From: Squalus acanthias
Taxonomy: Eukaryota
DNA: 64,000 nucleotides
Assembly: GCA_030390025.1 (NCBI GenBank)
Contig: CM059441.1
Coordinates: forward strand, 53,196,001 to 53,260,000
Direction: 5' to 3'
Numbering within the stretch: position 1 is the first letter of the stretch; each line of letters begins with the position of its first letter. Shown in pieces: positions 1,051-32,877 of the stretch. The translations under genes were made by a program, and so were the position numbers. The notes beneath the pieces were generated by a model. It worked only from the letters and a program-made list of their open reading frames with translations, was not told the DNA's origin and did no database searches.

Positions 1051-3418
1051 TTTTTTTTTAAATTCGTTTATGGGATCGGGGTATCGCTGGCAATGCCAGC
1101 ATTTATTGCCCATCCCTAGTTGCCCTTGAGAATGTGGTGGTGAGCCGCCTTCATGAACCGCTGCAGTCCGTGTGGTGATGGTACTCCCACAGTGCTGTTA
1201 GGTAGGGAGTTCCAGGATTTTGACCCAGCGACGATGAAGGATCGGCGATATATTTCTAAGTCAGGATGGTGTGTGACTTGGAGGGCAACTTGGAGGTGGT
1301 GGTGTTCTCATGCGCCTGCTGCCCTTGTCCTTTTAGGTGGAAGAGATCGCGGGTTTGGGAGGTGCTGCCGAAGAAGCCTTGGCGAGTTGCTGCAGTGCAT
1401 CTTGTCGATGGTACACACTGCAGCCACGGTACGCCGGTGGTGGAGGCAGTGAATGTTTAAGATGTTGGATGGGGTGCCAATCAAGCGGGCACTTTGTCCT
1501 GGATGGTGTCGAGCTTCTTGAGTGTTGTTGGAGCTGCACTCATCCAGGCAAGTGGAGAATATTCCATCACACTCCTTACTTGTGACTTGTAGTTGGTCGA
1601 AAGGCTTTGGGGAGACAGGAGGTGAGACACTCGCCGCAGAATACCTAGCCTCTGACCTGCTCTTGTTGCCACAGTATTTATGTGGCTGGTCCAGTTAAGC
1701 TTCTGGTTAATGGTGACCCCCAGGATGTTGACAGTGCGGGATTCGGCGATGGTAATGCCATTGAATGTCAAGGGCAGGTGGTTAGACGCTCGCTTGTTGG
1801 AGATCGTCATTGCCTGGCACTTCTGTGGCGCGAATGTTACCTGCCACTTATCAACCCAAGCCTGATAGTCGTCCAGGTCTTGTTCCATGCAGGCATGGAC
1901 TGCTTCATTATCTGTGGAGTTGCGAATGGCGCTGAACACCGTGCAGTCATCAGCGAACATCCCCATTTCTGACCTTATGCTGGAGGGAAGGTCATTGATG
2001 AAGCAGCTGAAGATGGTTGGGCCTAGGACACTGCCCTGAGGAACTCCTGCATCGATGTCCTGAGGCTGTGATGATTGACCTTCAACCACCACAACCATCT
2101 TCCTTTGTGCTAGATATGAATCCAGCCAGTGGAGCGTTTTCCCCCTGATTCCCATTGACTTCAGCTTTAATAGGGCTCCTTGATGCCAGATTCGGTCAAA
2201 TGCTGCCTTGATGTCAAGGGCAGTCACTCTCACCTCACCTCTGGAATCCAGCTCCTTTGTCCATGCTTGGACCAAGGCTGTAATGAGGTCGGGAGCCGAG
2301 TGGTTTTGGCGGAACCCAAACTGGGCATCAGTGAGCAGGTTATTGGTGAGTAAGTGCTGCTTGATAGCACTGTTGAAGACCCCTTCCATCACTTTGCTGA
2401 TGATTGAGAGTAGACTGATGGGGTGGTAATTGACTGGGTTGGATTTGTCCTGCTTTTTGTGGCCAGGACAAACCTGGGCAGTTTTCCACATTGTCGGATA
2501 GATGCCAGTGTTGTAGCTGTACTGGATCAGCTTGGCTAGAGGCGCGGCTAGTTCTGGAGCACAAGTCTTCAGCACGATAGCCGGGATGTTGTCGGGGCCC
2601 ATAGCCTTTGCTGTATCCAGTGTGCTCAGCCGTTTCTTGATATCACGTGGAGTGAATCGAATTGGCTGAATAATGGCTTCTGTGATGTTGGGGACCTCGG
2701 GAGTAGGCCGATATGAATCATCCACTCGGCACTTCTGGCTGAAGTTGGTTGCAAACGCTTCAGCCTTGTCTTTTGCACTCACGTGCTGAGCTCCACCATC
2801 ATTGAGGATGGGGATAGTCTTGGAGCCTCCTCCTCCCGTTAGTTGTTAAATAGTCCACCACCATTCACGACTGGATGTGGCAGGACTGCAGAGCTTTGAT
2901 CTGATCCGTTGATTGTGGGATCGCTTAGCCCTGTCTGTAGCATGCTGCTTCCGCTTTTTAGCATGCATGTAGTCCTGTGTTGCAGCTTCCCCAGGTTGGC
3001 ACCTCATTTTTGGGAAAACCTGGTGCTGCTCCTGGCATGCTCTTCTATACTCGTTATTGAACCAGGGTTGGCCCCCTGGCTTGGTTGTAATGGTAGAGTG
3101 AGGGATATGCCGGGCCATGAGGTTACAGATTGTGGTGGAATACAATTCTGCTGCTGCTGATGGCCCACAGCGCCTCATGGATGCCCAGTTTTGAGCTGCT
3201 AGATCTGTTCTGAATCTATCCCATTTAGCACGGTGGTAGTGCCACACAACACGATGGATGGTGTTCTCAGTGTGAAGACGAGACTTCGTCTCCGCAATGA
3301 CTGTGCGGTGGTCACTGCTGTCAAAGCTATCATGGACAGATGCATCTGCAACAGGTAGATTGGTGAGGACGAGGTCAAGCAGGTTTTCCCTCTTGTTGGT
3401 TCATTCACCACCTGTCGC
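1051..3418 (-). mobile_element. 5'-truncated non-LTR retrotransposon of the CR1/L2 group ('family B'), RT region plus 3' UTR and poly(A)
   Basis: ORF 1481-2782(-) has RT motifs QFGFR, ALDIKAAFDRIWH, GVPQGSVLGP and FADD; upstream fragment PWFN at 2846-3247; poly-T at 1051-1059 on + strand is the poly(A) tail; AATAAA in the 3' UTR. Confidence 0.95.
1481..2782 (-). pseudogene. Reverse transcriptase domain of family B LINE ORF2 (433-aa open segment of a disrupted ORF)
   Basis: RT motifs are intact within the segment; stop codons and frameshifts on both sides; endonuclease domain missing. Confidence 0.9.
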
Positions 3419-4903: not shown

Positions 4904-5907
4904 AAGAACATAAGAACATAAGAAATAGGAGCAGGAGTAGACCAATCTGCCCCTCGAGCCTGCTCCGCCATTCAATGAGATCATGGCTGATCTGATCCAA
5001 CCTCAACTCTAAAGAACACAAGAAGCAGGAGCAGGACCAGGCCACTCAGCCCTTGGGCCCGCTCCGCCACCCACAGGGCCTTGACCGATCCGAACTCAAA
5101 CTCATGTCCAATTTCCAGCCCGCTCCCCGTAACCCCTGATTCCCTTTACTTCTAGGAAACGGTCTATTTCTGTTTTAAATTTATTTAATGAAGTAGCTTC
5201 CACAGCTTCCTGGGGTAGCAAATTCCACAGACCCACTACCCTCTGAGTGAAAAAGTTTCTCCTCATCTCAGTTTTGAAAGAGGAGCCCCTTATTCTAAGA
5301 TTATGTCCCCTAGTTCTAGTTTCACCCATCATTGGGAACATCCTCACCGCGTCCACCCGATCAAGCCCCTTCACAATCTTATATGTTTCAATAAGATCGC
5401 CTCTCATTCTTCTGAACTCCAATGAGTAGAGTCCCAATCTACTCAACCTCTCCTCGTATGTCCACCCCCTCATCCCCGGAATTAACCGAGTGAACCTTCT
5501 TTGTACTGCCTCGAGAGCAAGTATGTCTTTTCTTAAGTATGGACACCAAAACTGTATGCAGTACTCCAGGTGCGGTCTCACCAATACCCTATACAACTGC
5601 AGCAATACCTCCCTGTTTTTATATTCTATCCCCCTAGCAATAAAAGCCAACATTCCATTGGCTTTCTTGATCACCTGCTGCACCTGCATACTAACTTTTT
5701 GATTTCCTTGCACCAAGACCCCCAGATCCCTTTGAACTGCAGTACTTTCCAGTTTCTCGCCATTAAGATAATAACTTGCTCTCTGATTTTTCCTGCCAAA
5801 GTGCATAACCTCACATTTTCCAATATTGTATTGCATCTGCCAAATCTCTGCCCACTCACCCAGCCTGTCTATATCCCCTTGTAGGTTTTTTATGTCCTCC
5901 TCACTCT
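4904..5907 (-). mobile_element. 5'-truncated CR1 LINE with a doubled 3' tail, inserted in the satellite
   Basis: ORF 5102-5836(-) is the CR1 ORF2 C-terminus (VRPHLEYCIQFW, LGLYSLEFRRMRGDLIETYKI, TRGH, FFTQRVVGLWN); tail aagaacataagaacataagaaataggagcagg; empty site cttctagttcctatgtaacagtctgcagg near 38780. Confidence 0.96.
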
Positions 5908-6361
5908 CTATGTAACAGTCTGCAGGGGCTGAATGGTCTCCTCCTGTTCCTTTGTAACAGTCTCAAGGGGATAAATGGCCTCCTCCTTTTCCTATGTAAT
6001 CGGCTTGAGGGGCTTAATGGTCCTACTCCTGATCCTTTGCCACCAGCTGGAGGGACTGAACAACCACCTCCTGTTCCTGTGTGACAGTCTCGACGAGATG
6101 AATGGTCCTCCTCCTGTTCCTATTCAACAGGCTTGAGGGGTGAATGGCATCCTCCTGTTCCTGTGTTACAGTCTCGAGGGGCTGAATGGCCTCCTCATGT
6201 TTCTATGTAACAGGCTCGAGGGGCTGAATGGTCTCTTCATGCATTTTGACCCTCTTTACTGTTGGCCTTTGTTTCTGCTCCCTACTAGTTTTGCTGACTA
6301 CTTTTCTAACTTGCACTTCCAGCTTTGTTTCTCTCTGTTCTGGGCCCACACTTAGGTTCCC

Positions 6362-8471
6362 CTTACGCCCCCACCTCAATGAATTTCGAGCTCGGCATGA
6401 TGCTGAGCTCTTTTTCCGCCGCCTTCGCCTCCGTGCCCACTTCTCTGTCCAGGAGTCTTGCCCCCGCACGGCTGACCCTTTCTCCCGCTTTCAGAATTCC
6501 CGTTCCACCTGGACCCCTCCCTCTGGCCTCTTACCCTCTCTAGATCTTTTCATTGCTAACTGCCGGCGTGACATCGGCCGTCTCAATTTCTCTGCTCCCC
6601 TCTCTCACTGCAACCTACCTCCCTCTGAACTTGCAGCACTCTATTCCCTCAGATCCAACCCCAACATTGTCATTAAACCTGCTGACAAGGGTCTTGCTGT
6701 TGTTGTTTGGCGTACCGACCTCTACCTAGCAGAAGCTGAACGGCAACTCTCCGGCACCTCCTCCTATCTCCTCCTGCACCATGACCCCACTACCGAACAT
6801 CAAACCACCATTTCCAAGACCGTCACTGACCTCATCTCCTCTGGAGATCTTCCCCCCACGGCCGCCAACCTCATAGTTCCCCAACCCCGCACAGCCCGCT
6901 TCTACCTCCTTCCCAAGATCCACAAACAGGACTGCCCCGGTAGACCCATTGTTTCAGCCTGTTCTTGCCCCACGGACCTTATCTCTTGCTATCTCGACTC
7001 TATTTTTTCTCCCCTTGTCCAGTCCCTTCCCACCTACATCCGCGACTCTTCCAACGCCCTCCGCCACTTTAACAGTTTCCAGTTTCCCGGCCCCAACCGC
7101 CTCCTTTTCAATATGGACGTACAATCCCTCTACACCTCCATTCCCCACCAGGATGGCCTGAGGGCGCTCCGCTTCTTCCTTGAACAGAGGCCCAACCAGT
7201 CCCCATCCACCACCACCCTCCTCCGCCTGGCTGAACTTGTTCTCACATTGAACAGCTTCTCCTTTGACTCCACCCATTTCCTCCAAATTAAAGGTGTTGC
7301 TATGGGTACCCGCATTGGTCCTAGCTATGCCTGCCTTTTCATGGGATATGTGGAACACTCTTTGTTCCAGTCCTACTCGGGTCCCCTCCCTCACCTCTTT
7401 TTCCGGTACATTGATGACTGTATCGGTGCCGTCTCCTGCTCTCGCCCTGAACTAGAACATTTCATTCACTATGCTTCCAATTTCCACCCTACCTTCACAT
7501 GGTCCATCTCCGACTCTTCCCTTCCCTTCCTCGACTTCTCCGTCTCCATCTCTGGGGATAGGTTATTGACTAACATTCACTACAAGCCCTCTGACTCCCA
7601 CAGCTACCTGGACTACACTTCCTCCCACCCCGCCTCCTGTAAGGACTCTATTCCATTCTCCCAGTTTCTCCGTCTCCGCTGCATCTGCTCTGACGATGCC
7701 ACCTTCCATACCAGTGCTTCCGACATGTCTTCCTTTTTCCTCAACCGAGGATTCCCCTCTACTGTGGTAGACACGGCCCTCGACCGTGTCCGTTCTATCT
7801 CCCGCACTTCTCCCCTCACCCCTGCCCCTCCCTCCTGGAACTACGATAGAGTTCCCCTTGTCCTCACCTTTCACTCCACCAGCCTCCACATTCAACGGAT
7901 CATCCTCTGCCATTTCCGCCACCTCCAGCGTGATCCCACCACCAAACGCATCTTCCCCTCACCTCCCCTTTCAGCATTCCGCAGGGACCGCTCTCTCCGT
8001 GACACCCTAGTCCACTCCTCTATCACCCCCAGCACCCCTTCCCCTTCGCCCGGCACCTTCCCGTGCAAGCGTAGGAGATGCAACACATGCCCTTATACAT
8101 CCCCCCTTCCCACTGTCCAGGGCCCCAAACACCCCTTCCAGGTGAAACAGCGATTTACTTGTACTTCCTGCAATTTAGTATACTGTATTCGCTGCTCACG
8201 ATGTGGTCTCATCTACATTGGGGAGACCAAACGCAGATTGGGTGACCGCTTTGCGGAACACCTCCGTTCAGTCCGTAAGGGGGACCCCGAGCTCCCGGTG
8301 GCCTGTCACTTTAATTCTCCGCTCCACTCCCACTCTGACCTCACCGTCCTCGGCCTATTACACTGTTCCACGGAAGCGCAGCATAAGCTTGAGGAACAGA
8401 ACCTCATCTTTCGTTTAGGCACTTTACAGCCTTCTGGACTCAATATCGAGTTCAACAATTTTAGATCATAA
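6362..8471 (+). CDS. Penelope-like RT-GIY-YIG endonuclease polyprotein; uninterrupted but lacking its native N-terminus
   Basis: Part of ORF 6228-8471 (747 aa); the first ~44 codons come from flanking satellite and antisense CR1 sequence. Confidence 0.85.
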
Positions 8472-8754
8472 CCTCAGCCCCTATCACAATTATATTTTAT
8501 TTTTTCATCCACCCTTTTGTTTGGCCCCCCTTCCCCCCGCCCCCCACTTTTTTTCCCCTCCCAGAAGCTGGCAGCTGTCCTTCATTCTGCCAGTGCATTT
8601 CACATTTCTTTTAGCCTCCACCTGTTACATCAACACCTCCTCTTGCCTTGATCATCTCTTAATGTCTCTCAATGTCTCTTAATCTCTCCTTTTGTTCTTT
8701 CATCCCCTCCCCCTTTTCCCAGCTTTATCCTTGCTTTAAATCTATTTCATTTCC

Positions 8755-8791
8755 AGTTCTGACGAAGGGTCTTCGACCTGAAACGTTAACT
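8755..8791 (+). ncRNA. Minimal type I hammerhead ribozyme motif (Penelope-associated)
   Basis: agtt-CTGACGA-a-gggtc(ttc)gacct-GAAAC-GT-T-aact: stem I agtt/aact, stem II gggtc/gacct, palindromic loopless stem III ACGT. Confidence 0.85.
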
Positions 8792-8861
8792 CTGTTTCTC
8801 TCTCCACGGATGCTGCCTGGCCTGCTGAGTTTTTCCAGCGTTTTCTGTTGTTATTTAGGTT

Positions 8862-9069
8862 ATGATGCGGAGATGCCGGTGTTGGACTGGGGTGGACAAA
8901 ATTGAGAGGTCGCACAACACCAGGTTATAGTCCAACAGTTTTATTTGAAATCACAAGCTTTCGGAGCTATCGATCGCCCCTACCTGAGGAAGGGGCGATC
9001 GATAGCTCCGAAAGCTTGTGATTTCAAATAAAACTGTTGGACTATAACCTGGTGTTGTGCGACCTCTCA
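8862..9069. mobile_element. 208-bp fold-back element, probably Penelope-derived and non-autonomous, with 12-bp TSD
   Basis: Perfect inverted arms 8903-8981 and 8991-9069 (79 bp) with a 9-nt loop; direct repeat gttatttaggtt at 8850-8861 and 9070-9081. Confidence 0.85.
8981..9020 (+). ncRNA. Minimal hammerhead ribozyme core at the apex of the fold-back element
   Basis: tac-CTGAGGA-a-ggggc(gatcgata)gctcc-GAAAG-CT-T-gtg: CUGANGA and GAAA core, stem II ggggc/gctcc, palindromic stem III AGCT, very short stem I. Confidence 0.7.
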
Positions 9070-9690
9070 GTTATTTAGGTTCCCAGCCCCCTGACAAACT
9101 CAGTTATATCCTTCCCAACAGCACTAGCAAACCCCCCTGCGAGGATATTGATCCCGGTTCTGCCGAGGTGTAACCCGTCCAGCTTGTACAGGTCCCACTT
9201 TCCCCAGGATTGGTCCCAATGCCTCAGGAACTTAAATCCCTCCCTCCTACACCATCTTTCCAGCCACGCATTCATCTGGTCTATTCTCCTATTTCTGCTC
9301 TCGCTAGCACGTGGCACTGGGAGTAATCCTCAGATTACTACTTTTGAGGTCCTGCTTTTTAATTTATTTCCAAGCTCCCTATATTCTGCTTGCAGGACCT
9401 CGTCCCTCTTTCTACCTATGTCGTTGGTATCGATATTCACCACGACCTCTGGCTGTTCACCCTCCCCCTTCAGAATGTCCTGCAGACACTCTTTTTCCAA
9501 CCCTCCTGTGCAGCTGAGCCAGTCGTATTGCCACGGACTTGGGTCTTGCTGAATTCCCCTGAGAAACCATCTCCCCCAGCAGTATCCAAAATGGAAAATC
9601 TGTTGAAGAGGGAGATAGGCCCAGGGGACTCCTGCACTACCTTCCTAGTTCTTTTACTCTGTCTGGCGGTCACCCATTCCCTTTCTGCGA

Positions 9691-14293: not shown

Positions 14294-14349
14294 AAATACT
14301 TATAGAGACACAGTATATGTAATAAGATTAATACAAAAGAAAAATAAGA

Positions 14350-15062
14350 TGTATCATCTGCGCTTTCACCTCCTCCCTTCCCACCATCTGGGGCCCCAAA
14401 CACTCCTCCCAGGTGAAACAGAGATTTACTTGTACTTCTTTCAATTTAGTATACTGTATTCACTGCTCACAATGCGGACTCCTCTACATTGGGGAGACAA
14501 ACCCAGATTGAGTGATCAGATTGCTGAACACCTCCGTTCAGTCCGCAAGCGTGACCCTGAGCTTCTGGTTGCTTACCATTTTAATTCTCCGTCCCACTCC
14601 CACTCTGACCTCTCTGTCCTCGGCCTCCTCCACTGTTCCAATGAAGCTCAACAGAAGTTCGAGGAACAGCACCTCATCTTTCGATTCAGCACTTTACAAC
14701 CTTCTGAACTCAAGATTGAGTTCAACAATTTCAGATCATAATCACTGCTCCCATTTATTCAGACAGCAGGTGCTGGTAATGGCTCTGCTGTTGCCATTTA
14801 TTGCTCCTCTAGACTCATCTTTTGTTGCCTTGCACCATCATCCCTTTTGTCATTTAATCATTCCTGCCTTCCACCCTATCACAGACCTTCCCTTTTGTTC
14901 TTTCCTCCCCTCCCCTTTCACTAACTCTGTACCTCCTTAAAACTGTCTCACTTTCTTCCAGTTCTGATGAAAGGTCATCGACCTGAAACATTAACACTGT
15001 TTCTCTCTCCACAGATGCTGCCTGACCTGCTGAGTATTTCCAGCATTTTCTGGTTTTATATT
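14350..15062 (+). mobile_element. 3' fragment of a Penelope-like element (GIY-YIG remnant plus 3' UTR)
   Basis: AEHLRSVRKRDPELLVAYHFNSPSHSHSDL...IEFNNFRS, homologous to 8100-8855. Confidence 0.92.
14960..14995 (+). ncRNA. Degenerate minimal hammerhead motif of the second Penelope copy
   Basis: agtt-CTGATGA-a-aggtc(atc)gacct-GAAAC-AT-T-aac; the stem III palindrome is broken (ACAT instead of ACGT). Confidence 0.7.
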
Positions 15063-15074
15063 TAGTAACACATT

Positions 15075-16310
15075 GTCAGGGACTTCGACTGAGCAAATGA
15101 ACCGGTTTTCAGTGCTGAATACCGGTGAGGGTGACAACACCTGGAAGGAGTCCAGTCCAGATCACATGGACAGCACCAGGGGACAAATGACTCCATGGGG
15201 GGCACAGTGAAGTGCAGGAATGCAGTGGTTGTCGGTGATTTAATAGTCAGGGGACAGACAGGCGTTTCTGCAACGGTCAACGTGTGTCTCACATGGTCTG
15301 TGGACTCTCTGGCGCCAGGGTAAATGATGTCACTGAACGGGTGCAGAACATTCCATGGGGGGAAGGGGAGCAGCCAGAAGTCATGGAACATGTTGGAATG
15401 AGGGAAGAAAAGGGTTGAGGTCCTGCAGTCCGAGTCTCAGGAGCTAGGGAGGAAGTTAAAGAGCAGGACCTCAAAGGTGGAAATCTTTGGATTACTCCCA
15501 GTGCCACGTGCTAGTGAGGGTGGGAACAGTAAGATAAGGCAGTATGATGGTGGCTGGAGAAATTGTGCAGGAGAGACGGCTTCACATTCCTCGGGGATTG
15601 GGACCAGTTCCGGGGCAGGAGCGACCTGTACAAAATGGACGGGTTGCACCTCAATCAGGCTCGGACCAATGACTTTGCGCGGAGGTTAACGAGTGCTGTG
15701 AGTGAGGATTTAAACTACTTTGGTGGGGGAGGGGCACCGAGATGAAGCAATGGATAGGAGAGACAAGATTCACAGAGGACTGGGAGTGGCAAACAGCATT
15801 AGAATAATGAGTAGCTCTGAAATAGGAGGGACCAGAGAAGGGGAAATGAGAGGCAGACAAGTTGGGATTCGGAGTACATGTGCGTAAATACACAGAAGGT
15901 GGTCAATAAGGTTGGTGAGCTGCAGGCACAAATTACCACATGGGATTATGATATAGTGGCAATAACGGAAGCCTGGCTCAAACAAGGGCAGGATTGGGAT
16001 GTGGGCCAGATGGGATCCAGGTTACTGAGGGAAGTAAGCGGGGAAATTGGGGAAGCTCTGGTCACTAGCTTCCAACCCTCCTGAGAAATGGGGATGGTGC
16101 CAGAGGACTGGAGTAGAGTAAATGTTATAACCCTGTTCAAAAAAGTGGAGAGGGATAAACCCTGTTATTACAGACCAGGCAGCCTAACGTCGGTGGTGGG
16201 GGAACTTTTAAAGACAATAATCCGGGACAAACTTAATTGGATTTGGAAAAGTATGGGCTAATAAATGAAAGTCAGCAAGGATTAGTTCAAGCAAAATCGT
16301 GTTTGACTAA
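15075..16310 (+). mobile_element. Degenerate, internally deleted CR1 (ORF1 esterase, ORF2 endonuclease start, RT fragment)
   Basis: CRRDGFTFLGDWDQFRGRSDLYKMDGLHLN; NKVGELQAQITTWDYDIVAITEAWL; gtgccagaggactggag (VPEDW). Confidence 0.88.
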
Positions 16311-19146: not shown

Positions 19147-19417
19147 TCTGGAGTACTGTGCCCAGTTTTGATTCCCTCCAGCCCCCGCTCCGCCCCCACA
19201 TGGTGGGTGATGTAGTGGCCTTAGAACAGGTCCACAGCAGAGCTACGAGGAGAACATCAGCTACTGGAATAGTCTCAAGGGCCTTGGTCTATTCAGTCTA
19301 GAGCAGCGTAGACTCAGAGATGACCTGATAGATGTCTATGAAATAATTAGAAGGCTGGAGAGCATGCCTATTGATAGACTACCTCAGTTTAACAGATCGG
19401 AACGGACCAGGGGCGTT
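19147..19417 (+). mobile_element. Old CR1 ORF2 C-terminal fragment abutting the start of the main satellite array
   Basis: gagtactgtgcccagttt (EYCAQF) and LGLFSLEQRRLRDDLIDVYEII...RTRG. Confidence 0.75.
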
Positions 19418-22400
19418 TCGAGTGGCTGAATGGCCTCCTCCTGTTCCTATGTAACAGCCTTGAGGGGCTGAATGGCCTTTTCCTATTCCTAATCAACAGG
19501 CTCCAGTGGCTGAATGGCCTCCTCCTGTTCCTTTGTAATAGTTTTGAGGGGCTGAATGGCCTTCTCCTGTTCCTATGTAACAGCCTTGAGGGGCTGAATG
19601 ACCTCCTCCTGTTTCTATGCAGCAGGCTCGAGCAGCTGAATGTTGCAGCTCGTGTTCCCAAGTAACAGGCTCGAGGTTTTGAATGGCATCCACCTGATCC
19701 TATGTAACAGGCTCAAGTGGATGGAATGGGACTTCTCGTGTTCGTATGTAGCATCCTCGAGGGGCTGAATGGTCCTAATCCTGTTCCTATGTAACAGGCT
19801 TGAGAGGCTGAATAGCCTCCTCCTGTTCCTATGCAACATGCTCGAGGGGCTGAATAGCCTCCTCTTGTTCCTAAGTAGCAGGCTCAAGGGGCTGCTTGGC
19901 ATCCTTCAGTTCCTATGTAACAGGCTTGAGTGGCTGAAAGGCCTTCTCCTGATTTTTTCCAACAGGCTCGAGGGGCTGAATCATCTTGCACCTGTTCCTA
20001 TGCAACAGGCCTGAGGGGCAGAATGGCCTACTACTGTTCCTATGTAACAGGCTTCAGGGGCTAAATGGGCCTCCTCCTATTCATGTGCAACAGGCTCAAG
20101 TGGCTGAATGGTCTCTTCATGTTCCTATGTAACATGCTCGAGTGGCTGAATAGCCTCCTACTGTTCCTAAGTAGCAGGCTCAAGGGGTTCATTGGTATCC
20201 TTCAGTTCCTATGTAACAGGCTTGAGTGACTGAATGGCCTCCACCTGATCTTTTCTAACAGGCTCGAGGGGCTGAATCAGCTTGCACCTGTTCCTATGCA
20301 ACAGGCCTGAGGTGCTGAATGGCCTCCTCCTGCTCCTGTGTACTAGCCTCGTGTGGCTGAATGGCCGACTACTGTTCCTATGTAACAGGCTTGAGAGGCT
20401 AAATGGGCCTCCTCCTATTCGTGTGCAACAGGCTCGAGGGTTAGAATGGCCGAATCATGTTCCTAAGTAACAGGCTCGAGGTTCTGAATGGCCTTCTCCT
20501 GTTCCTATGTAAGAGGCTTGAGGGTTTGAATGGCCAAATCATGTTCCTATGTAACAGGCTCAAGGGGATGAATGGCCTCCTCCTGTTCCTAAGTAACAGG
20601 TTTGAGGGGCTGAAAGGGCCTCCTCGTGTTCATATGCAAGAGGCTCAAGGGGCTGAATGGCCTACTCCTGTTTCTATGTAACGGCTCGATGAGCTAAATG
20701 GCCTCCTCCTGTTCCCATGTAACAGGCTCGAGGTTCTGAAAGGCCTCCTCCATTTCTTATGCAACAGGCTCAAGTGGCTGAATAGCCTCCTCCATTCCTA
20801 TGTAACAGGCTTGAGGGGCTGAAAGGGCCTCCTCCTTTTCCTATGTAACAGGCTGAAGTGGCTGAATGGCCTCCTCCTGTTCCTATGGAACAGGCTTGAG
20901 GGGCTGAATGGTCTCCTCCTGTTCATATGCAACAGGCTTGAGGGGCTGAAAGCTCCTCCTCGTGTTCGTATGCAAGAGGCTCAAGGGGTTGAATGGCCTC
21001 ATCCTGTTTCTTTGGAATGGCTCGATGTACTAATTGGCCTCCTCCTGTTCCTATGTACAGGCTCGAGGTTCTGAATGGCCTCCTCCTGATCCTATGTAAC
21101 AGGCTCAAGTGGACGGAATGGGAATCCTTGTGTTCGTATGTAACATCCACGAGTGAACTGAATGGTCATACTCCTGTTCCTTTGTAACAGGCTCGAGGGG
21201 CTGAATGGCCTGCTCCTGTTCTTATGTAACAGGCTTGAGGGGCTGAATGGGCCACCTTCTCTTCTTCTGCATCAGGCTCGAGGGGCTGAATGGCCTCCTC
21301 ATGTTCCTATGTAACAGGCTCGAGGGGCTGAATGGCCTGCTCCTGTTCTAATGTAACAGGCTCGAGGGGCTGAATGGCCTCCTCTTTTTCCCATGTAACA
21401 GCTTCGAGGGGCAGAATGGCCTGTTCCTGTTCATATGTACCAGGATCAAGGGGTTAATCCTCCTGTTCCTATGTAGTCGGCTCGATTGGCTGAATGTGGC
21501 ACCTCCTGTTCCCATGAAACAACCTTGAGTATCTGAATGGCTTCCTCCTGATCCTATGTAGCGGGCTCAAGTGGACAGAATGGGAATCCTCATGTTCGTA
21601 TGTTACATCCTCGAGGGAGCTGAATGGACCTCCTTCTGTTCTTCTGCATCAGGCTCGAATGGTTGAATCGCCTCCTCTTTTTCCCATGTAACAGCCTCGA
21701 GGGGCAGAATGGCCTGTTCCTGTTCATATGTATCAGGTTAAGGGGATAAATGGCCTCCTCCTGTTTCAATGCAACAGGCTCTAGGGGCTGAATGAGCCTT
21801 CTCCTGTTCCAATGTAAAAGTCTCAAGTGGGCTGAATGGTCTCCTCCTGTTTCTATGTAACCGACTCAAGGGGCTGACTGGCCCTACTCCTGCTCCTATG
21901 CAACCAGCTCGAGTGACTGAACAACTGCCTCCTGTTACTAAGTTACAGACTCGAGTAGCTGAATGGTCCTGCTCCAGTTCCTATGTAACAGTATCGAGGG
22001 GCTGAATGGCCTCCTCCTTTTCCTATGTAACAGGCTCAATGGGATAATTGGCCTTAACCTATTCCTATGCCAAAGGCTTTAGGGGCTTAATGGACTACTC
22101 CTGTTCCTGTGTAACAGGCTCGAGAGGCTGAATTGCCTCCTATTATTCCTATGTAACAGGCTCGAGATGCTTATTGGGCCTACTCCTGTTCCTATACAAC
22201 AGGCTCGAGATGCTTATTGGGCCTACTCCTGTTCCTATACTACTGGCTCGAGAGGCTAAATGTCCTCCTCCTTTTGCTATGTAACATGCTCGAGGGGCTG
22301 AATAGCCTCCTCCTGCTCCAAAGTAGCAGGCTCAAGGGGCTAATCAGCATCCTTCAGTTCCTATGTAACAGGCTTCAGGGGCTGAATGGGCCTCCTCCTG

Positions 22401-22485
22401 TTCGTATGCAACAGGCTCCAGCGGCTGAATGGGCCTCCTCCTGTTCCTATGCTACTTGCTCGAGGGGCTGAATGGCCTCCTCCTG

Positions 22486-24852
22486 TTTTTTTTTAATTCG
22501 TTTATGGGATCGGGGTATCGCTGGCAATGCCAGCATTTATTGCCCATCCCTAGTTGCCCTTGAGAAGGTGGTGGTGAGCCGCCTTCATGAACCGCTGCAG
22601 TCCGTGTGGTGATGGTACTCCCACAGTGCTGTTAGGTAGGGAGTTCCAGGATTTTGACCCAGCGACGATGAAGGATCGGCGATATATTTCTAAGTCAGGA
22701 TGGTGTGTGACTTGGAGGGCAACTTGGAGGTGGTGGTGTTCTCATGCGCCTGCTGCCCTTGTCCTTCTAGGTGGAAGAGATCGCGGGTTTGGGAGGTGCT
22801 GCCGAAGAAGCCTTGGCGAGTTGCTGCAGTGCATCTTGTCGATGGTACACACTGCAGCCACGGTACGCCGGTGGTGGAGGCAGTGAATGTTTAAGATGTT
22901 GGATGGGGTGCCAATCAAGCGGGCACTTTGTCCTGGATGGTGTCGAGCTTCTTGAGTGTTGTTGGAGCTGCACTCATCCAGGCAAGTGGAGAATATTCCA
23001 TCACACTCCTTACTTGTGACTTGTAGTTGGTCGAAAGGCTTTGGGGAGACAGGAGGTGAGACACTCGCCGCAGAATACCTAGCCTCTGACCTGCTCTTGT
23101 TGCCACAGTATTTATGTGGCTGGTCCAGTTAAGTTTCTGGTTAATGGTGACCCCCAGGATGTTGACAGTGCGGGATTCGGCGATGGTAATGCCATTGAAT
23201 GTCAAGGGCAGGTGGTTAGACGCTCGCTTGTTGGAGATAGTCATTGCCTGGCACTTCTGTGGCGCGAATGTTACCTGCCACTTATCAACCCAAGCCTGAT
23301 CGTCGTCCAGGTCTTGTTCCATGCAGGCATGGACTGCTTCATTATCTGTGGAGTTGCGAATGGCGCTGAACACCGTGCAGTCATCAGCGAACATCCCCAT
23401 TTCTGACCTTATGCTGGAGGGAAGGTCATTGATGAAGCAGCTGAAGATGGTTGGGCCTAGGACACTGCCCTGAGGAACTCCTGCATCGATGTCCTGAGGC
23501 TGTGATGATTGACCTTCAACCACCACAACCATCTTCCTTTGTGCTAGGTATGAATCCAGCCAGTGGAGCGTTTTCCCCCTGATTCCCATTGACTTCAGCT
23601 TTAATAGGGCTCCTTGATGCCAGATTCGGTCAAATGCTGCCTTGATGTCAAGGGCAGTCACTCTCACCTCACCTCTGGAATCCAGCTCCTTTGTCCATGC
23701 TTGGACCAAGGCTGTAATGAGGTCGGGAGCCGAGTGGTTTTGGCGGAACCCAAACTGGGCATCAGTGAGCAGGTTATTGGTGAGTAAGTGCTGCTTGATA
23801 GCACTGTTGAAGACCCCTTCCATCACTTTGCTGATGATTGAGAGTAGACTGATGGGGTGGTAATTGACTGGGTTGGATTTGTCCTGCTTTTTGTGGCCAG
23901 GACAAACCTGGGCAGTTTTCCACATTGTCGGATAGATGCCAGTGTTGTAGCTGTACTGGATCAGCTTGGCTAGAGGCGCGGCTAGTTCTGGAGCACAAGT
24001 CTTCAGCACGATAGCCGGGATGTTGTCGGGGCCCATAGCCTTTGCTGTATCCAGTGTGCTCAGCCGTTTCTTGATATCACGTGGAGTGAATCGAATTGGC
24101 TGAATAATGGCTTCTGTGATGTTGGGGACCTCGGGAGTAGGCCGATATGAATCATCCACTCGGCACTTCTGGCTGAAGTTGGTTGCAAACGCTTCAGCCT
24201 TGTCTTTTGCACTCACGTGCTGAGCTCCACCATCATTGAGGATGGGGATAGTCTTGGAGCCTCCTCCTCCCGTTAGTTGTTAAATAGTCCACCACCATTC
24301 ACGACTGGATGTGGCAGGACTGCAGAGCTTTGATCTGATCCGTTGATTGTGGGATCGCTTAGCCCTGTCTGTAGCATGCTGCTTCCGCTTTTTAGCATGC
24401 ATGTAGTCCTGTGTTGCAGCTTCCCCAGGTTGGCACCTCATTTTTGGGAAAACCTGGTGCTGCTCCTGGCATGCTCTTCTATACTCGTTATTGAACCAGG
24501 GTTGGCCCCCTGGCTTGGTTGTAATGGTAGAGTGAGGGATATGCCGGGCCATGAGGTTACAGATTGTGGTGGAATACAATTCTGCTGCTGCTGATGGCCC
24601 ACAGCGCCTCATGGATGCCCAGTTTTGAGCTGCTAGATCTGTTCTGAATCTATCCCATTTAGCACGGTGGTAGTGCCACACAACACGATGGATGGTGTTC
24701 TCAGTGTGAAGACGAGACTTCGTCTCCGCAATGACTGTGCGGTGGTCACTGCTGTCAAAGCTATCATGGACAGATGCATCTGCAACAGGTAGATTGGTGA
24801 GGACGAGGTCAAGCAGGTTTTCCCTCTTGTTGGTTCATTCACCACCTGTCGC
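22486..24852 (-). mobile_element. Family B LINE, duplicate of 1051-3418
   Basis: Same junctions, offset 21434; ORF 22915-24216 differs from 1481-2782 by one residue (DDDQ vs DDYQ). Confidence 0.95.
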
Positions 24853-27800
24853 CTTTTCCAATTCCTAAGCAACAGGCTCCAGCAGCTGAATGGCCTCCTC
24901 CTATGCCTTCGTAACAGTTTTGAGGGGCTGAATGACCTCCTACTGTTCATATCTACCAGTTTCGAGGGGCTGAATGGGCACCTCGTGTTCCGATGGCACA
25001 GGCTCTAGGGGCTAAATAGCCTCCACTTGGTCCTATGTAACAGGCTCGAGGGGCTGAATGGGCTCCTCCTGTTTCTATATAACCGGCTCAAGGGGCTGAC
25101 TGGCGCTACTCCTGCTCCTATGCAAGCAGCTCGAGTGAATGAACAACTGCCTCCTGTTCCTAAGTTACAGACTCGAGGAGCTGTATGGTCCTCCTCCTGT
25201 TCCTATGTAACAGTCTCGAGGGTCTGAATGGCATCCTTCTTTTCCTATGTAACAGGCTCAATGGGATAATTGGCCTACTCCTATTCCTATGCAACAGGCT
25301 CTCGGGGCTTAATGGCCTCCTCCTGTTCCTGTGTAATAGGCTTGAGGGGCTGAATCGCCTCCTCTTCGTCCTTTGTAACAGGCTCGAGGGCTGAATGGGC
25401 CTCCTCCTGTTCCTATGAAACAGGCTCAAGATGCTTATTGGGCCTACTCCTGTTCCTATACAACTGGCTCGAGAGGCTTAATGGCCTCCTTCTGTTCCTA
25501 TGCAACATGCTCGAGGGGCTGAAAAGCCTCCTCCTGTTCCTAAGTAGCAGGCTCAAGGGGCTAATTGGCATCCTTCAGTTCCTGTGTAAATGGATTGAGG
25601 GGCTGAATGGGCCACCTCCTATTCCGATGCAATAGGCTTGAGGGGCTGAATGTCCTCCTCCTGATCTTTTCTAACAGGCTCGAGGGGTTGAATCAACTTC
25701 CACCTGTACCTATGCAACAGGCCTGAGGGGCTGAATGGCCTCCTCCTATTCCTGTGTAATAGATTCGAGGGGCTAAATGGCCTCCTCCTGTTCATTTGCA
25801 ACAGGCTCGAGGGTATGAATGGCCTACTCCTGTTTCTATGTAAGAGGCTCCAGTGGCTTAATGGCCTCCTCCTGTTCCTTCGTAAAAGTTTTGAGGGGTT
25901 GAATGGGCCTCCTCCTGTAAAGATACAACTTGCTCGACGGGCTGAATGGACTCCTCCTGTTCCTATGTAACAGCCTTGAGGGGCTGAATGACCTTCTCCT
26001 GTTCATATCTACCAGTTTCGAGGGGCTGAATGGCCTCCTCCTGATCCTATTTAACAGGCTCAAGTGGACAGATTGGGACTCCTCGTGTTCATATGTAACA
26101 TCCTCGAGGGAGCTGAATGGTCCTACTCCTGTTCCTATGTAACAGGCTCGAGGGGCTGAATGGCCTCCTCCTGTTCCTATGTAACAGGCTTGAGGGGCTG
26201 AATGGACCTCCTTCTGTTCTTCGGCATCAGGCATGAGGGGCTGAATGGCCTCCTGTTGTTCCCATGTAACAGGCTCAAGGGGCAGAATGGCCTGCTCCTG
26301 TTCATATGTACCCGGTTCAAGGGGATAAATGGCCTCCTCCTGTTTCTATGCAACAGGCTCTAGGGGCTGAATGGGCCTTCTCCTGTTCCGATGTAAAAGC
26401 TTCAAGTGGGCTGAATCGGCTCCTCCTGTTTCTATGTAACCAGCTCAAGGGACTGACTGGCCCTACTCCTGCTCCTATGCAACCAGCTCGAGTGACTGAA
26501 CAACTGCCTCCTGTTCCTAAGTTACAGACTCGAGGAGCTGAATGGTCCTCCTCCTATTCCTATGCAACACGCTCTAGGGGCTTAATGGCCTCCTCCTGTT
26601 CCTGTACAACTGGCTCGAGAGGCTTAATGGCCTCCTCCTGTTCCTATGTAGCAGGCTCAAGGCACTAATTGGCATCCTTCAGTTTCTATGAAACAGGCTT
26701 GAGGGGCTGAATGGGCCACCTCCTCTTCCGATGCAACAGTCTCGAGGGACTGAATGGCCTCCTCATGATCTTTTCTAACAGGCTCCAGGGGCTGAATCAG
26801 CTTCCACCTGTTCCTATACAACAGGCCTGAGGGGCTGAATGGCCTCCTCCTGTTCCTGTGTAATAGCCTCGAGGGGTTGAATGGCCTACTACTGTTTCTA
26901 TGTAACAGGCTTGAGGGGCAGAAAGGATCTGCTTCTGTTCTTCTGCATCAGGCTCGAGGGGCTTAATTGCCTTCTCTTTTTCCCATGTAATAGGCTCAAG
27001 GGGCAGAATGGCCGACTCCTGTTCATATGTACCAGGTTCAAGGGGATAAATGGCATCCTCCTGTTTCTTTGCAACAGTCTCGAGGGGCTGAATGGCCTCC
27101 TCTTTGTCCTTTGAAACATCTTGAGGGGCTGAATGGGCCTTCTCCTGTTCCTATATAAAAGCCTCAAGTGGGCTGAATGGGTTCCTCCTGTTTCTATGTA
27201 ACCGGCTCAAGGGACTGACTGGCCCTACTCCTGATCTTAAGCAACCAGCACGAGTGACTGAACAACTGCCTCCTGTTCCTAAGTTACAGACTCGAGGAGT
27301 TGCATGGACCTCCTCCTGTTCCTATGCAACAGGCTCAAGGGGCGAAATGGCCTGCTCCTGTTCCTATGTAACAGTCTCGAGGGGATGAATGGCCTCCTCC
27401 TTTTCCTATGTAACAGGCTCGATGGGATAATTAGCCTAATCCTATTCCTATGCAACAGGCTCTAGGGGCTTAATGTCCTCCTCTTGTTTCTGTGTAACAG
27501 GCTCGAGGGGCTGAATTACCTCCTCTTGGTCCTATTAACAGGCTCGAGAGCTGAATGGGCCTCCTCCTATTCCTGTGCAATAGGCTCGGCATGCTTATTG
27601 GGCCTACTCCTGTTCCTGTACAACTGGCTCGAGAGGCTTAATGGGCTCCTCCTGTTCCTATGCAACATGCTCGAGGGCCTGAATAGCCTCCTCCTGTTCC
27701 TAAGTAGCAGGCTCAAGGGGCTAATTGGCATCCTTCAGTTCCTATGTAACAGGCTTGCGGGGCTGAATGGGCCACCTCCTATTCCGATGCAGCAGGCCTG

Positions 27801-28086
27801 AGGGGCTGAATGGCCTCCTCATGTTCCTGTGTAATAGCCTCGAGGGGTTGAATGGCCTACTATGGTTCCTATGTAACAGGCTTGGGGGGCTGAATGGGCC
27901 TCCTCCTGTACATATGCAACAGACACGAGGGGCTGCATGGCCTCTTCCTGTACCTATGTAACAGGCTTGAGGGGCTGAAAGGCCCTCCTCGTGTTAGTAT
28001 GCAAGAGGCTCAAGGGGCTGAATTGCCTACATCTGTTTCAATGTAACGGCTCAATGGGCTAAATGGCCTCCTCCTGTTCCTATGTA

Positions 28087-28241
28087 CTCTTTTGATGGGT
28101 ACCAAAACAAATATCTGTAAATCAGTAAAACTCTAAAGGAAACTTAACAAATCAAATTAAAATTTGGTAGTCCGGGGTGACGATGCACTCCAGTCCCCGC
28201 GGCGCCCACCGGTCGCGGAAAAACTCAAGCGTGCCGGCGGA
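28087..28241 (-). mobile_element. 155-bp insertion, probably the 3' end of a Tx1-clade LINE
   Basis: Minus strand reads AGTLEFFRDRWAPRGLECIVTPDYQILI* then a T-rich UTR, resembling Tx1 ORF2 C-termini; CpG-rich, unlike the array; cctgttcctatgta on both sides. Confidence 0.65.
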
Positions 28242-31200: not shown

Positions 31201-32404
31201 TCCTCGTGTTCGTATGTAACATCCTCGAGGGAGCTGAATGGTCCTACTCCTGTTCCTATGTAACAGGCTCGAGGGGCTGAATGGCCTCCTCCTGTTCCTA
31301 TGCAACAGGCTTGAGGGGCTGAATGGACCTCCTTCTGTTCTTCTGCATCAGGCTCGAGGGGCTGAATGGCCTCCTGTTGTTCCCATGTAACAGGCTCAAG
31401 GGGCAGAATGGCCTGCTCCTGTTCATATGTACCCGGTTCAAGGGGATAAATGGCCTCCTCCTGTTTCTATGCAACAGGCTCTAGGGGCTGAATGGGCCTT
31501 CTCCTGTTCCGATGTAAAAGCTTCAAGTGGGCTGAATCGGCTCCTCCTGTTTCTATGTAACCAGCTCAAGGGACTGACTGGCCCTACTCCTGCTCCTATG
31601 CAACCAGCTCGAGTGACTGAACAACTGCCTCCTGTTCCTAAGTTACAGACTCGAGGAGCTGAATGGTCCTCCTCCTGTTCCTATGCAACACGCTCTAGGG
31701 GCTTAATGGCCTCCTCCTGTTCCTGTACAACTGGCTCGAGAGGCTTAATGGCCTCCTCCTGTTCCTGTGCAACTGGCTCGAGAGGCTTAATGGCCTCCTC
31801 CTGTTCCTGTACAACTGGCTCGAGAGGCTTAATGGCCTCCTCCTGTTCCTATGTAGCAGGCTCAAGGCACTAATTGGCATCCTTCAGTTTCTATGAAACA
31901 GGCTTGAGGGGCTGAATGGGCCACCACCTCTTCCGATGCAACAGTCTCGAGGGACTGAATGGCCTCCTCATGATCTTTTCTAACAGGCTCCAGGGGCTAA
32001 ATCAGCTTCCACCTGTTCCTATACAACAGGCCTGAGGGGCTGAATGGCCTCCTCCTTTTCCTGTGTAATAGATTCTAGGGGCTAAATGGCCTCCTCCTGT
32101 TCATATGCAACAGGCTCGAGGGTATGAATGGCCTACTCCTGTTTCTATGTAAGAGGCTCCAGTGGCTTAATGGCCTCCTCCTGTTCCTTCGTAACAGTTT
32201 TGAGGGGTTGAATGGGCCTCCTCCTGTAAAGATGCAACTTGCTCGAGGGGCTGAATGGACTCCTCCTGTTCCAATGCAACAGGCTCGAGGTTCTGAATGG
32301 CCTCCTCCAGTTCAGATGTAACAGCGTCTTGGGGCTGAAGGGGCCTTCTGCTGTTCCTACACAACAGGCTCTAGGGGCTGATTGGCCTCCTCTTGTTCCT
32401 ATGT

Positions 32405-32877
32405 CACTATGTCCTGGACGCCATCCAGGACAATGCAGGCCGCTTGATTGGCACCCCATTCACCACCTTAAACATTCACTCCCTCCACCCCCAGTGTACC
32501 GTGGCTGCAGAGTGTACCATCTACAAGATGCGCTGCAACAACTCGTCAAGGCTTCTTCGGCAGCACCTCCCAAACCCGCAACCTCTTCCACCTACAAGGA
32601 CAAGGGCAGCAGGCGCATGCGAAATGCACCACCTCCAAGTTCCCCTCCAAGTCACACACCATCCTGACTTGGAAGTATATCGCCATTTCTTCATCGTCGC
32701 TGGGTCAAAATCCTGTAACTTCCTTCCATAACAGCACTGTGGGAGCACCTTCACCACACGGATTTCAGCGCTTAAAAAGGCGGCTCACCACCACATTCTC
32801 AAGGGCGATTAGGGATGGGCAATAAATGCTGGCCTTGCCAGTGATGCCAGATCCTATGAAGGAATAAAACAAAAAAA
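32405..32877 (+). mobile_element. Family B LINE 3' fragment, higher-order repeat marker copy 1
   Basis: cactatgtcctggacgccatccaggaca ... gggcaataaatgctggcc ... aaaacaaaaaaa. Confidence 0.93.

What the first reader, a model, noticed from the sequence alone, without database searches (positions are those of the whole stretch)
8850..9081. 208-bp fold-back element with a hammerhead core at its apex and a 12-bp TSD
Seen: perfect 79-bp inverted arms (8903-8981 and 8991-9069), a 41-bp unpaired left extension, and the direct repeat gttatttaggtt on both sides. The loop acctgagga supplies CUGANGA, followed by stem II ggggc/gctcc, then GAAA and palindromic AGCT. The + strand therefore has a complete minimal hammerhead core, while the - strand copy is broken exactly at CUGANGA. 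Established: Penelope-like elements carry minimal hammerheads with palindromic stem III and often have inverted terminal segments. Inference: a tiny non-coding parasite, or an extremely truncated insertion, of a second Penelope family whose inversion point coincides with the ribozyme 5' boundary. The transcript could fold either as a long rod-like hairpin (a dsRNA substrate) or as the ribozyme, but not both. Mismatch-free arms imply a recent insertion.
Basis: partly seen in the sequence, partly recalled or inferred. Interest (0 to 1): 0.8.

Follow-up and report, generated by a model that had tools for sequence, protein, structure and literature searches.

The report
Miniature head-to-head Penelope-type retro-insertion
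This is a 208-base hairpin-shaped scrap made of two opposed copies of the tail end of a Penelope-like jumping gene, inserted in one event; its ribozyme remnant is incomplete, and the structure is an ordinary by-product of how these elements integrate.

Summary
A 208-bp insert (8862-9069) has 79-nt perfect inverted arms, 83 nt with one mismatch. A 41-nt extension sits on the left only, and an exact 12-bp direct repeat flanks the insert. The apex carries the CUGANGA / helix II / GAAA boxes, with the traits published for Penelope-like-element (PLE) minimal hammerheads.

It is not a self-contained parasite or a working ribozyme switch. Contigs from four public runs show the arms belong to a very abundant repeat family. 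Other copies invert at many different points. The parental sequence continues upstream of the core, so this copy lacks the 5' strand of helix I. The rod fold beats any hammerhead-compatible fold by about 42 kcal/mol.

Each arm holds parental sequence that the other lacks: 9 nt against 41 nt. This fits reverse transcription primed at both nicked target strands from two RT start sites, as shown in vitro for an Anolis PLE. The 41 nt would then be the known one-sided PLE "tail".

First-stage notes record similar mini fold-backs elsewhere in this genome; these are unchecked. Verdict: ordinary, a new member of a known kind.

The parts
8850..8861 (.). Left copy of the 12-bp target-site duplication GTTATTTAGGTT. 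About its first 7 nt are the short 3' end of the upstream Penelope element and the last 5 nt are flank.
   Evidence: D3, 100% identical. Homology with the sister Penelope copy and with family contigs ends at about 8854-8856.
8862..8981 (-). Antisense arm: 120 nt of the family-2 3' module, whose sense reads on the - strand. It runs from the base of helix II to the long (distal) 3' end.
   Evidence: Contigs of other copies cross the 8902/8903 boundary: those covering 8908 reach 28-38 letters or more to either side (table 3).
8862..8902 (-). 41-nt 'tail', present at this end only. In sense it is C-rich (17 C, 9 A, 10 T, 5 G).
   Evidence: The published one-sided 30-40-bp PLE tail is the stretch between two RT start sites (PMC8557442; PMC3846280; PMC11167929).
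8982..9069 (+). Sense arm: 88 nt of the same module, from 2 nt upstream of the hammerhead core to the short (proximal) 3' end, without tail.
   Evidence: Positions 8982, 8986 and 8990 all read as the parental sense sequence seen in other copies (tables 5c and 7).
8984..9017 (+). Hammerhead remnant: CUGAGGA (8984-8990), extra A (8991), helix II (8992-9009), GAAA (9010-9013), GCUU (9014-9017). Predicted scissile bond is 9017|9018. The 5' strand of helix I is missing.
   Evidence: own descriptor; published traits; parental upstream sequence.
9070..9081 (.). Right copy of the 12-bp target-site duplication.
6242..8856 (+). Context: a 5'-truncated Penelope-like element ('family 1'). Its RT + C-terminal GIY-YIG ORF is listed as 6228-8471, it has its own minimal hammerhead at 8759-8787, and its short 3' end forms part of the target.

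Best explanation
A single retrotransposition event of a Penelope-type (PLE) family left a miniature head-to-head insertion. The endonuclease nicked both strands of an AT-rich target 12 bp apart. That target is the junction between the short 3' end of an older Penelope copy and its flank. The top-strand 3' end primed cDNA at the distal RT start site of the element RNA, giving the 120-nt antisense arm with the 41-nt tail. The bottom-strand 3' end primed cDNA at the proximal start site, giving the 88-nt sense arm without tail. Both cDNAs stopped within 9 nt of each other at the hammerhead (base of helix II, and 2 nt before C3). They were joined there, at or beside the natural CCUGAGG near-palindrome, and gap repair duplicated the 12 bp. 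The hammerhead boxes at the apex are a truncated passenger. The 5' strand of helix I is absent, and any transcript would fold as an 83-bp rod. Shown: the anatomy, family membership of the arms, variable inversion points in other copies, the missing helix I strand, and the rod energetics. Inferred: priming at both nicks, the order of events, and that the family's master copy encodes RT + GIY-YIG.
For: laid contigs of 4 runs at >=85% likeness. Contigs fitting two places of the stretch, i.e. both arms, numbered 6224 of 48263 laid (X1), 6233 of 34537 (X5), 1305 of 7092 (X8) and 63 of 640 (X17), so the arms are a high-copy family in at least three coded organisms. Of the 15 joints shown (144 in all), 14 link a left-arm position (8894-8967) to 8982-9026 at different points. 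Loose ends before 8982 (9 contigs in X8, 3 in X17, agreement 0.94/0.98) and the letters between joint 8932>9004 show that the parental sequence runs on upstream of ACCUGAGGA. The 9 nt at 8982-8990 read sense at all three discriminating positions, and the 41-nt tail exists only in the other arm. Neither arm is therefore a plain copy-back of the other. The literature describes inverted 5'-truncated copies and a 30-40-bp tail at only one end (PMC8557442). It describes an inverted pLTR plus a 31-bp tail on one inverted pLTR, 8-10-bp TSDs, and palindromes at inverted junctions (PMC3846280). An Anolis PLE protein cleaves and extends both strands, prefers AT-rich DNA, and starts RT at two internal sites, with the tail being the stretch between them; its hammerhead is dispensable for insertion (PMC11167929). 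The hammerhead has all the published PLE min-HHR traits except helix I. The proximal end lies in a loop closed by a perfect 9-bp stem formed with the tail; 17 of 1000 shuffles reach such a stem.
Against: That the family is a PLE rests on structure alone. No listed contig spans the whole insert (table 8), so this particular palindrome has no independent confirmation, and no empty site was seen. The joints have short sides (20-29 letters) at an 85% threshold, and the tool warns that such joints come from repeats. I read them as other copies on that basis, but each single joint is weak. Rfam gives no hammerhead hit. The 41-nt tail is just above the published 30-40 bp. The 120-nt sense module as a whole folds no better than shuffles (z -0.02). 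The nick contexts are AT-rich but are not cleanly the ATT motif reported for the Anolis enzyme. The order could be reversed, with the older element inserting next to the fold-back by 7-nt microhomology.
Confidence: 0.8

Rival explanations
1. Snap-back, self-primed insertion. One cDNA was made from one nick, folded back on itself (or the RT switched to the nascent cDNA), and copied itself to form the second arm. This is the self-priming idea raised for PLE inverted junctions.
For: PMC3846280 (passage) infers self-priming from palindromes at inverted junctions. The junction here lies in a near-palindrome, CCUGAGG. Some other copies are exactly symmetric about the same axis: joints 8946>9026 and 8967>9005, the latter at the helix II loop. 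Both arms share G/C at 8908/9064, where most family contigs read A at 8908 (table 3).
Against: Each arm has parental sequence that the other lacks: 41 nt of tail in one, and 9 nt reading sense at 8982, 8986 and 8990 in the other. A copy-back product cannot be longer than its template at both ends. An intramolecular fold at CCU-G-AGG would have a 1-nt loop.
Confidence: 0.12
2. One reading: a self-contained tiny non-coding mobile element (fold-back, MITE-like or retrozyme-like) that propagates as this unit, with a functional hammerhead / dsRNA conformational switch.
For: There are terminal inverted repeats plus a TSD and complete conserved core boxes on one strand. First-stage notes mention 'families' of mini fold-backs in this genome (unchecked).
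Against: The ends are unequal, with 41 nt on one side only. Inversion points differ among copies. The arm sequence occurs nowhere else in the 64-kb window. The 5' strand of helix I is missing. The rod is about 42 kcal/mol more stable than a core-compatible fold. Published PLE minimal hammerheads show no monomer cleavage and low dimer cleavage. Non-LTR retrozymes are tandem arrays (abstract), and this is a single inverted pair.
Confidence: 0.04
3. Assembly or sequencing artefact, such as a chimeric fold-back read or a collapsed hairpin.
For: Palindromes are a known artefact class, and PLE structures are known to trouble assemblies (PMC8557442 passage). No listed contig spans the insert.
Against: An exact 12-bp TSD and continuous, distinct flanks on both sides are not expected of an artefact. 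The asymmetric tail matches a known biological signature. Short-read contigs from two samples of the same coded organism hold other inverted junctions of the same family.
Confidence: 0.03

Closest known systems
Canonical endonuclease-positive Penelope-like element insertions with an inverted pLTR and a one-sided 'tail' (e.g. Pen2a_Av of Adineta vaga; Penelope/Poseidon clade)
   Same: Both have a head-to-head inverted arrangement of 5'-truncated copies, a short extension at the 3' end of only one of the inverted copies, a short TSD, a small palindrome at the inverted junction, and a hammerhead motif in the terminal repeat (PMC3846280; PMC8557442).
   Different: Here nothing but the last 88-120 nt of the element was inserted: no ORF and no direct pLTR. 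The TSD is 12 bp against 8-10 bp in the rotifer examples, and the tail is 41 nt against 30-40/31. No RT/GIY-YIG master copy of this family was seen here.
Poseidon PAc of Anolis carolinensis, in vitro integration (Frangieh et al. 2024, PMC11167929)
   Same: The enzyme cleaves and extends both target strands. Two adjacent internal RT start sites lie in an AC-rich stem-loop about 110 nt downstream of the hammerhead, and the tail is the stretch between them. It prefers an AT-rich target, and the hammerhead is not needed for insertion. Here the two outer ends are 41 nt apart. The long end is 119 nt from the start of helix II. The short end lies in a loop closed by a 9-bp stem with the C-rich tail.
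   Different: That is an in vitro result for a different family in a lizard, whose start sites lie inside the ORF. Here the module has stop codons by my own reading, and no enzyme was tested. Its supplementary figures mapping tails were not available to me.
PLE minimal hammerhead ribozymes (Cervera and de la Pena 2014, PMC4209133)
   Same: [quoted passage not shown] The neighbouring Penelope hammerheads at 8759 and 14964 have the same layout.
   Different: Helix I is 4-5 bp in the published motifs and 4 bp (UCAC/GUGA) in the parental sequence. It is cut to 2 pairs plus a wobble here. The helix II loop is 8 nt. No Rfam hammerhead model scores it, or the neighbouring Penelope hammerhead.
Animal non-LTR retrozymes (tandem hammerhead repeats, non-autonomous PLE derivatives)
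   Same: They are hammerhead-bearing, non-coding and related to PLE pLTRs (abstract and passages of bioRxiv 10.64898/2026.07.22.740005).
   Different: Retrozymes are head-to-tail tandem units thought to circularise. This is a single inverted pair with only one core.
MITEs / fold-back DNA transposons
   Same: They have terminal inverted repeats flanked by a TSD.
   Different: Here the ends are unequal, the inner junction varies among relatives, the arms are the 3' end of a retroelement module, and a 12-bp TSD is atypical (that last point is from my own knowledge).

Membership tests
Penelope-like element (PLE) insertion | Family encodes an RT with a GIY-YIG endonuclease in one ORF | not testable with these tools
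   No other copy of family 2 is in the window. Only the neighbouring family-1 element shows RVT_1 (E 1.5e-5) plus C-terminal GIY-YIG (E 5.3e-4), both below Pfam's cut-offs.
Penelope-like element (PLE) insertion | Inverted (head-to-head) 5'-truncated copies forming inverted repeats | tested here: met
   The sense arm is 8982-9069 and the antisense arm 8862-8981, with both 3' ends facing outward.
Penelope-like element (PLE) insertion | Optional 30-40-bp 'tail' at only one end of the insertion | tested here: met
   A 41-nt extension at 8862-8902 is absent from the other arm. It is contiguous with the arm in many contigs of other copies (table 3, place 8908).
Penelope-like element (PLE) insertion | Short target-site duplication at an AT-rich target | tested here: met
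   There is an exact 12-bp repeat, 9 of whose 12 letters are A/T. Published examples are 8-10 bp.
Penelope-like element (PLE) insertion | Hammerhead motif in the terminal repeat | tested here: met
   the motif is at 8984-9013. The same box is seen in another copy's contig (table 5c).
PLE minimal hammerhead ribozyme | Conserved core: CUGANGA, GAAA, G10.1-C11.1, a nucleotide between 9 and 10.1, palindromic 15.2-16.2, U16.1 followed by H17 | tested here: met
   against the traits listed in PMC4209133.
PLE minimal hammerhead ribozyme | Helix I of 4-5 bp directly 5' of C3 | tested here: not met
   In this copy only G9018-C8983 and U9019-A8982 pair, plus a G9020-U8981 wobble. The parental UUC preceding 8982 is seen in loose ends and is replaced here by the other arm.
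PLE minimal hammerhead ribozyme | Self-cleavage (as a dimer) | not testable with these tools
   This needs a bench assay. Energetics argue against a core-compatible fold (-123.3 vs -165.0 kcal/mol).
Rfam hammerhead families | Score at or above the gathering threshold of a hammerhead covariance model | tested here: inconclusive
   There were 0 matches at gathering in the window and no hammerhead among 12 matches at E<=10 in 8700-9250. That stretch also holds the neighbouring Penelope hammerhead, which is missed as well, so the models do not see loop-less helix III motifs.
Non-LTR retrozyme | Head-to-tail tandem repeats, each with a hammerhead | tested here: not met
   This is a single inverted pair with one core box only.
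MITE / fold-back DNA transposon | Equal terminal inverted repeats and a constant unit in all copies | tested here: not met
   There is a 41-nt one-sided extension. Fourteen different arm-to-arm joints are shown for other copies.

The most novel reading that the evidence does not exclude
Mini fold-backs like this one are in-vivo footprints of a symmetric integration mechanism. A dimeric PLE enzyme nicks both strands about 12 bp apart and primes cDNA at both. It regularly uses the distal RT start site at one nick and the proximal site at the other, which explains the 'tail at one end only'. Both syntheses abort at the protein-bound hammerhead. Genome-wide, such abortive events would seed thousands of perfect hairpins that could feed small-RNA silencing of the family.
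Probability: 0.3. Interest if true: 0.55.

Novelty: new member of a known kind. Interest (0 to 1): 0.25.

Why it matters
As a single locus it matters little: it is a dead, non-coding by-product. Its value is as a clean, minimal natural example. Each arm carries sequence the other lacks, and the two outer ends match the with-tail and without-tail termini. This is the pattern expected if the two-strand cleavage and two RT start sites seen in vitro for an Anolis PLE also operate in vivo, here in what is probably a cartilaginous fish. A genome-wide census of such mini insertions could test that model without any biochemistry. Practically, these perfect hairpins are assembly hazards and can mimic miRNA precursors; one sub-threshold Rfam miRNA match appeared here.

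Tried and rejected
- **Rfam.** There were no matches at gathering thresholds on the whole window. At E<=10 on 8700-9250 there was no hammerhead among 12 matches. The best were hairpin-shaped miRNA families, such as mir-1597 at 48.9 bits against a gathering score of 93. I treat these as shape matches, and the negative hammerhead result as insensitivity, because the neighbouring Penelope hammerhead is missed too.
- **More copies in the window.** None were found.
- **More copies in public collections.** There were 0 hits in metagenome contigs and 0 in genome contigs.
- **Findings look-up.** The look-up by sequence was blank. One word query was also blank.
- **Copy-back of one arm from the other.** Rejected as the sole mechanism, because each arm has unique sequence.
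- **Cis 'double hammerhead' using the left arm's AAGCUU as partner.** Rejected: the strand that would follow it cannot pair with the nucleotides 5' of C3.
- **Dating from mismatch-free arms.** I did not date the insertion; 79 shared positions give only a loose bound.
- **Depth.** The tool warns that contig depth cannot rank parts, so I used contig counts and placements instead.
- **Literature.** Three searches found no paper on such mini fold-backs in cartilaginous fish. Only one review holds 'Penelope', 'shark' and 'hammerhead ribozyme' (listing only). This is not proof that none exists. I did not ask for supplementary files. The supplements of PMC11167929 (tail mapping) and PMC4209133 (hammerhead families) may bear on the tail and family claims.

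Full report
**What is there**

- A 208-bp insert (8862-9069) sits between two exact copies of GTTATTTAGGTT (8850-8861 and 9070-9081).
- 8903-8981 pairs perfectly with 8991-9069 (79 nt). Pairing continues through CCT/AGG around a centre at 8986, with one A/A mismatch at 8982/8990.
- The tool's 86-nt arms (98% complementary) include three outer positions that run into the right direct repeat.
- 8862-8902 (41 nt) has no partner on the right.
- The window has no N. The arm occurs nowhere else in it.
- As RNA the + strand folds into a rod of -165 kcal/mol. Shuffles give -56.2 +/- 4.5, z is -24.4, and 0 of 200 shuffles reach it. The - strand gives -158.4 kcal/mol.

**Surroundings**

- Upstream lies a 5'-truncated Penelope-like element, which I call family 1.
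  - The ORF is listed as 6228-8471 (747 aa). [quoted passage not shown]
  - The search scored 8000 candidates and found 670 relatives at E<=1e-10. The closest named ones are elasmobranch proteins at 62-71% identity. The genome is therefore probably that of a cartilaginous fish.
  - The ORF's first codons lie in a roughly 42-bp-period satellite that fills much of the window.
- Its homology with a sister copy (14347-15064) ends at about 8854-8856.
- Contigs of other family-1 copies run on past 8856 with a shared sequence (loose ends 'behind 8856'). Both copies in this window therefore stop at a short end, without tail.
- The 12-bp repeat is thus about 7 nt of the older element's end plus 5 nt of flank. 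The simplest reading is that the fold-back was inserted into that junction. The reverse order, through 7-nt microhomology, cannot be excluded.

**The hammerhead**

I wrote a descriptor: CUGANGA, 0-1 extra nt, a helix II of at least 4 bp, then GAAA.
- It finds three sites in the window, all on the + strand: 8759 and 14964 (family 1) and 8984 (this element).
- 200 random Markov sequences give a mean of 0.22 sites and a maximum of 3.
- All three sites have one nucleotide between A9 and helix II, a 5-bp helix II opening with G-C, G-U or A-U, and GAAA followed by a four-letter NG/CN-UU. This places a palindrome (AACGUU or AAGCUU) where helix III should be.
- Those are the traits listed for PLE minimal hammerheads (passages of PMC4209133): a nucleotide between 9 and 10.1, G10.1-C11.1, palindromic 15.2-16.2, and a helix I of 4-5 bp. 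That paper reports no monomer cleavage and low dimer cleavage.
- Rfam gives no hammerhead hit at gathering thresholds or at E<=10. It also misses the family-1 motif in the same stretch, so this negative says little.

**What other copies show**

I laid Logan contigs of four runs at >=85% likeness: two samples of coded organism A, one of B and one of F.
- Thousands of contigs lie on the stretch. Those that fit two places of it, i.e. both arms, number 6224 of 48263 (X1), 6233 of 34537 (X5), 1305 of 7092 (X8) and 63 of 640 (X17).
- The arms and the tail therefore belong to a high-copy family shared by several species.
- Contigs covering 8908 reach well to both sides of the 8902/8903 boundary, so the tail is contiguous with the arm in other copies.
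- Of 144 joints, 15 are shown. Fourteen of these link a left-arm position (8894-8967) to a position between 8982 and 9026, at different points. Two are exactly symmetric (8946>9026 and 8967>9005, the latter at the helix II loop).
- I read these as other head-to-head copies with other inversion points. The caveat is that their shorter sides are only 20-29 letters.
- One such contig, present in both samples of organism A, carries TTC followed by ACCTGAGGAA between its two sides.
- Contigs in X8 (9) and X17 (3) that align from 8982 rightwards continue leftwards with a consistent sequence ending in TTC.
- The CUGAGGA box is therefore parental, not created by the junction. The parental RNA has UCAC before the core, which pairs with GUGA after the predicted cleavage site to give a 4-bp helix I.
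- In this copy only two of those pairs plus a wobble survive.
- A fold that keeps helix II and leaves the core unpaired costs about 42 kcal/mol relative to the rod (-123.3 vs -165.0).
- The ribozyme remnant is thus incomplete and would be out-competed.
- No listed contig spans the whole insert, so this particular palindrome has no independent confirmation.

**How it arose**

- The 9 nt at 8982-8990 differ from their own reverse complement at three positions (8982, 8986, 8990). All three read as parental sense.
- The sense arm is therefore 8982-9069 (88 nt) and the antisense arm 8862-8981 (120 nt).
- Each arm holds parental sequence the other lacks: 9 nt at the inner end of one, and 41 nt at the outer end of the other.
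- A simple snap-back of one cDNA cannot produce that. Two cDNAs primed separately can.
- This matches published knowledge.
  - PLE insertions are often head-to-head, with a 30-40-bp tail at only one end (PMC8557442 passages).
  - A rotifer example has an inverted pLTR, a 31-bp tail on one of the inverted pLTRs, TSDs of 8-10 bp, and palindromes at inverted junctions (PMC3846280 passages).
  - A purified Anolis PLE protein cleaves and extends both strands of AT-rich DNA. It starts reverse transcription at two internal sites in an AC-rich stem-loop, and the tail is the stretch between them. The hammerhead is not needed for insertion (PMC11167929, main text read).
- Here the 12-mer target is 9/12 A/T. 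The tail is C-rich in sense (17 C and 9 A of 41).
- The short end lies in a loop closed by a perfect 9-bp stem between the arm and the tail; 17 of 1000 shuffles reach such a stem. The module as a whole folds no better than shuffles (z -0.02).
- Both cDNAs ended within 9 nt of each other, at the base of helix II and 2 nt before C3. Whether this reflects a pause at a structured or protein-bound hammerhead, or is chance, I cannot say. Other copies show it is not a rule.

**Rivals**

- Snap-back self-priming is the main mechanistic rival (0.12). Symmetric relatives favour it, and the unique sequence in each arm disfavours it here.
- A self-mobile fold-back or retrozyme-like unit with a working ribozyme/dsRNA switch (0.04) is contradicted by the unequal ends, the variable junctions, the missing helix I and the energetics.
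- An assembly artefact (0.03) does not explain the exact TSD or the distinct flanks.

**Comparison and novelty**

Every structural feature has a published counterpart in PLEs. What is particular is the extreme truncation (no ORF and no direct repeat) and the clean asymmetry.
- I file it as a new member of a known kind. Its membership in PLEs is met on four structural features and is untested on the defining one, an RT/GIY-YIG master copy.
- First-stage notes list similar mini fold-backs with 11-13-bp TSDs and a 'fixed asymmetric geometry' on other pieces of this genome. These are unchecked leads, not support.
- Three literature searches found no description of such structures in cartilaginous fish.

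**Limits**

- There is no family consensus, no ORF linkage, no empty site, no long reads and no RNA evidence.
- Supplementary files were not requested. Those of PMC11167929 and PMC4209133 may hold tail maps or vertebrate hammerhead families relevant here.
- The following come from my own knowledge and not from a call: that an extra nucleotide after A9 is tolerated in some viroid hammerheads, that non-LTR RTs can jump between template ends, and that a 12-bp TSD is unusual for DNA transposons.

Noticed in passing
window 8808-8856, plus loose ends 'behind 8856': In family 1 the consensus that continues past the short end (seen only as loose-end consensus, agreement 0.4-0.7) contains an 8-nt stretch complementary to GGATGCTG at 8808-8815. 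In both families the tail seems to pair back and close a loop that holds the short 3' end.
   Followed up: partly
window 8759-8787 and 14964-14992: The two family-1 minimal hammerheads differ in helix II (GGGUC..GACCU versus AGGUC..GACCU: G-U becomes A-U) and in its loop, while keeping the core. Both copies end at the same short terminus.
   Followed up: partly
window 5890-6241 and hundreds of other places (e.g. 19400-22500, 24860-33800, 34780-51990): A satellite with a period of about 42 bp fills a large part of the window. The stretch 6000-6241 matches hundreds of places at 70-99% identity. The Penelope element is inserted at its edge, and the listed ORF start at 6228 lies in the satellite.
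   Followed up: no
window 9104-9484 and 15342-15713: The sequence right of the insert is another repeat, 72% identical to 15342-15713 in the opposite orientation. I suspect from recall only that it is a LINE ORF1-type fragment; I did not identify it.
   Followed up: no
window 8946-9026: There is a sub-threshold Rfam match of the hairpin to the miRNA precursor family mir-1597 on both strands (48.9 and 48.6 bits, gathering score 93). Such PLE hairpins could be mistaken for miRNA precursors.
   Followed up: no
window 1481-2782 / 22915-24216 and 5102-5836 / 33993-34727: Pairs of ORFs have identical length and strand (433 aa and 244 aa). This suggests large duplicated segments within the window.
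   Followed up: no
protein P0078: A ray protein named 'divergent protein kinase domain 1C isoform X2' matches the Penelope ORF at 65% identity over 60% of the query. It is probably a gene model that swallowed a PLE fragment.
   Followed up: no
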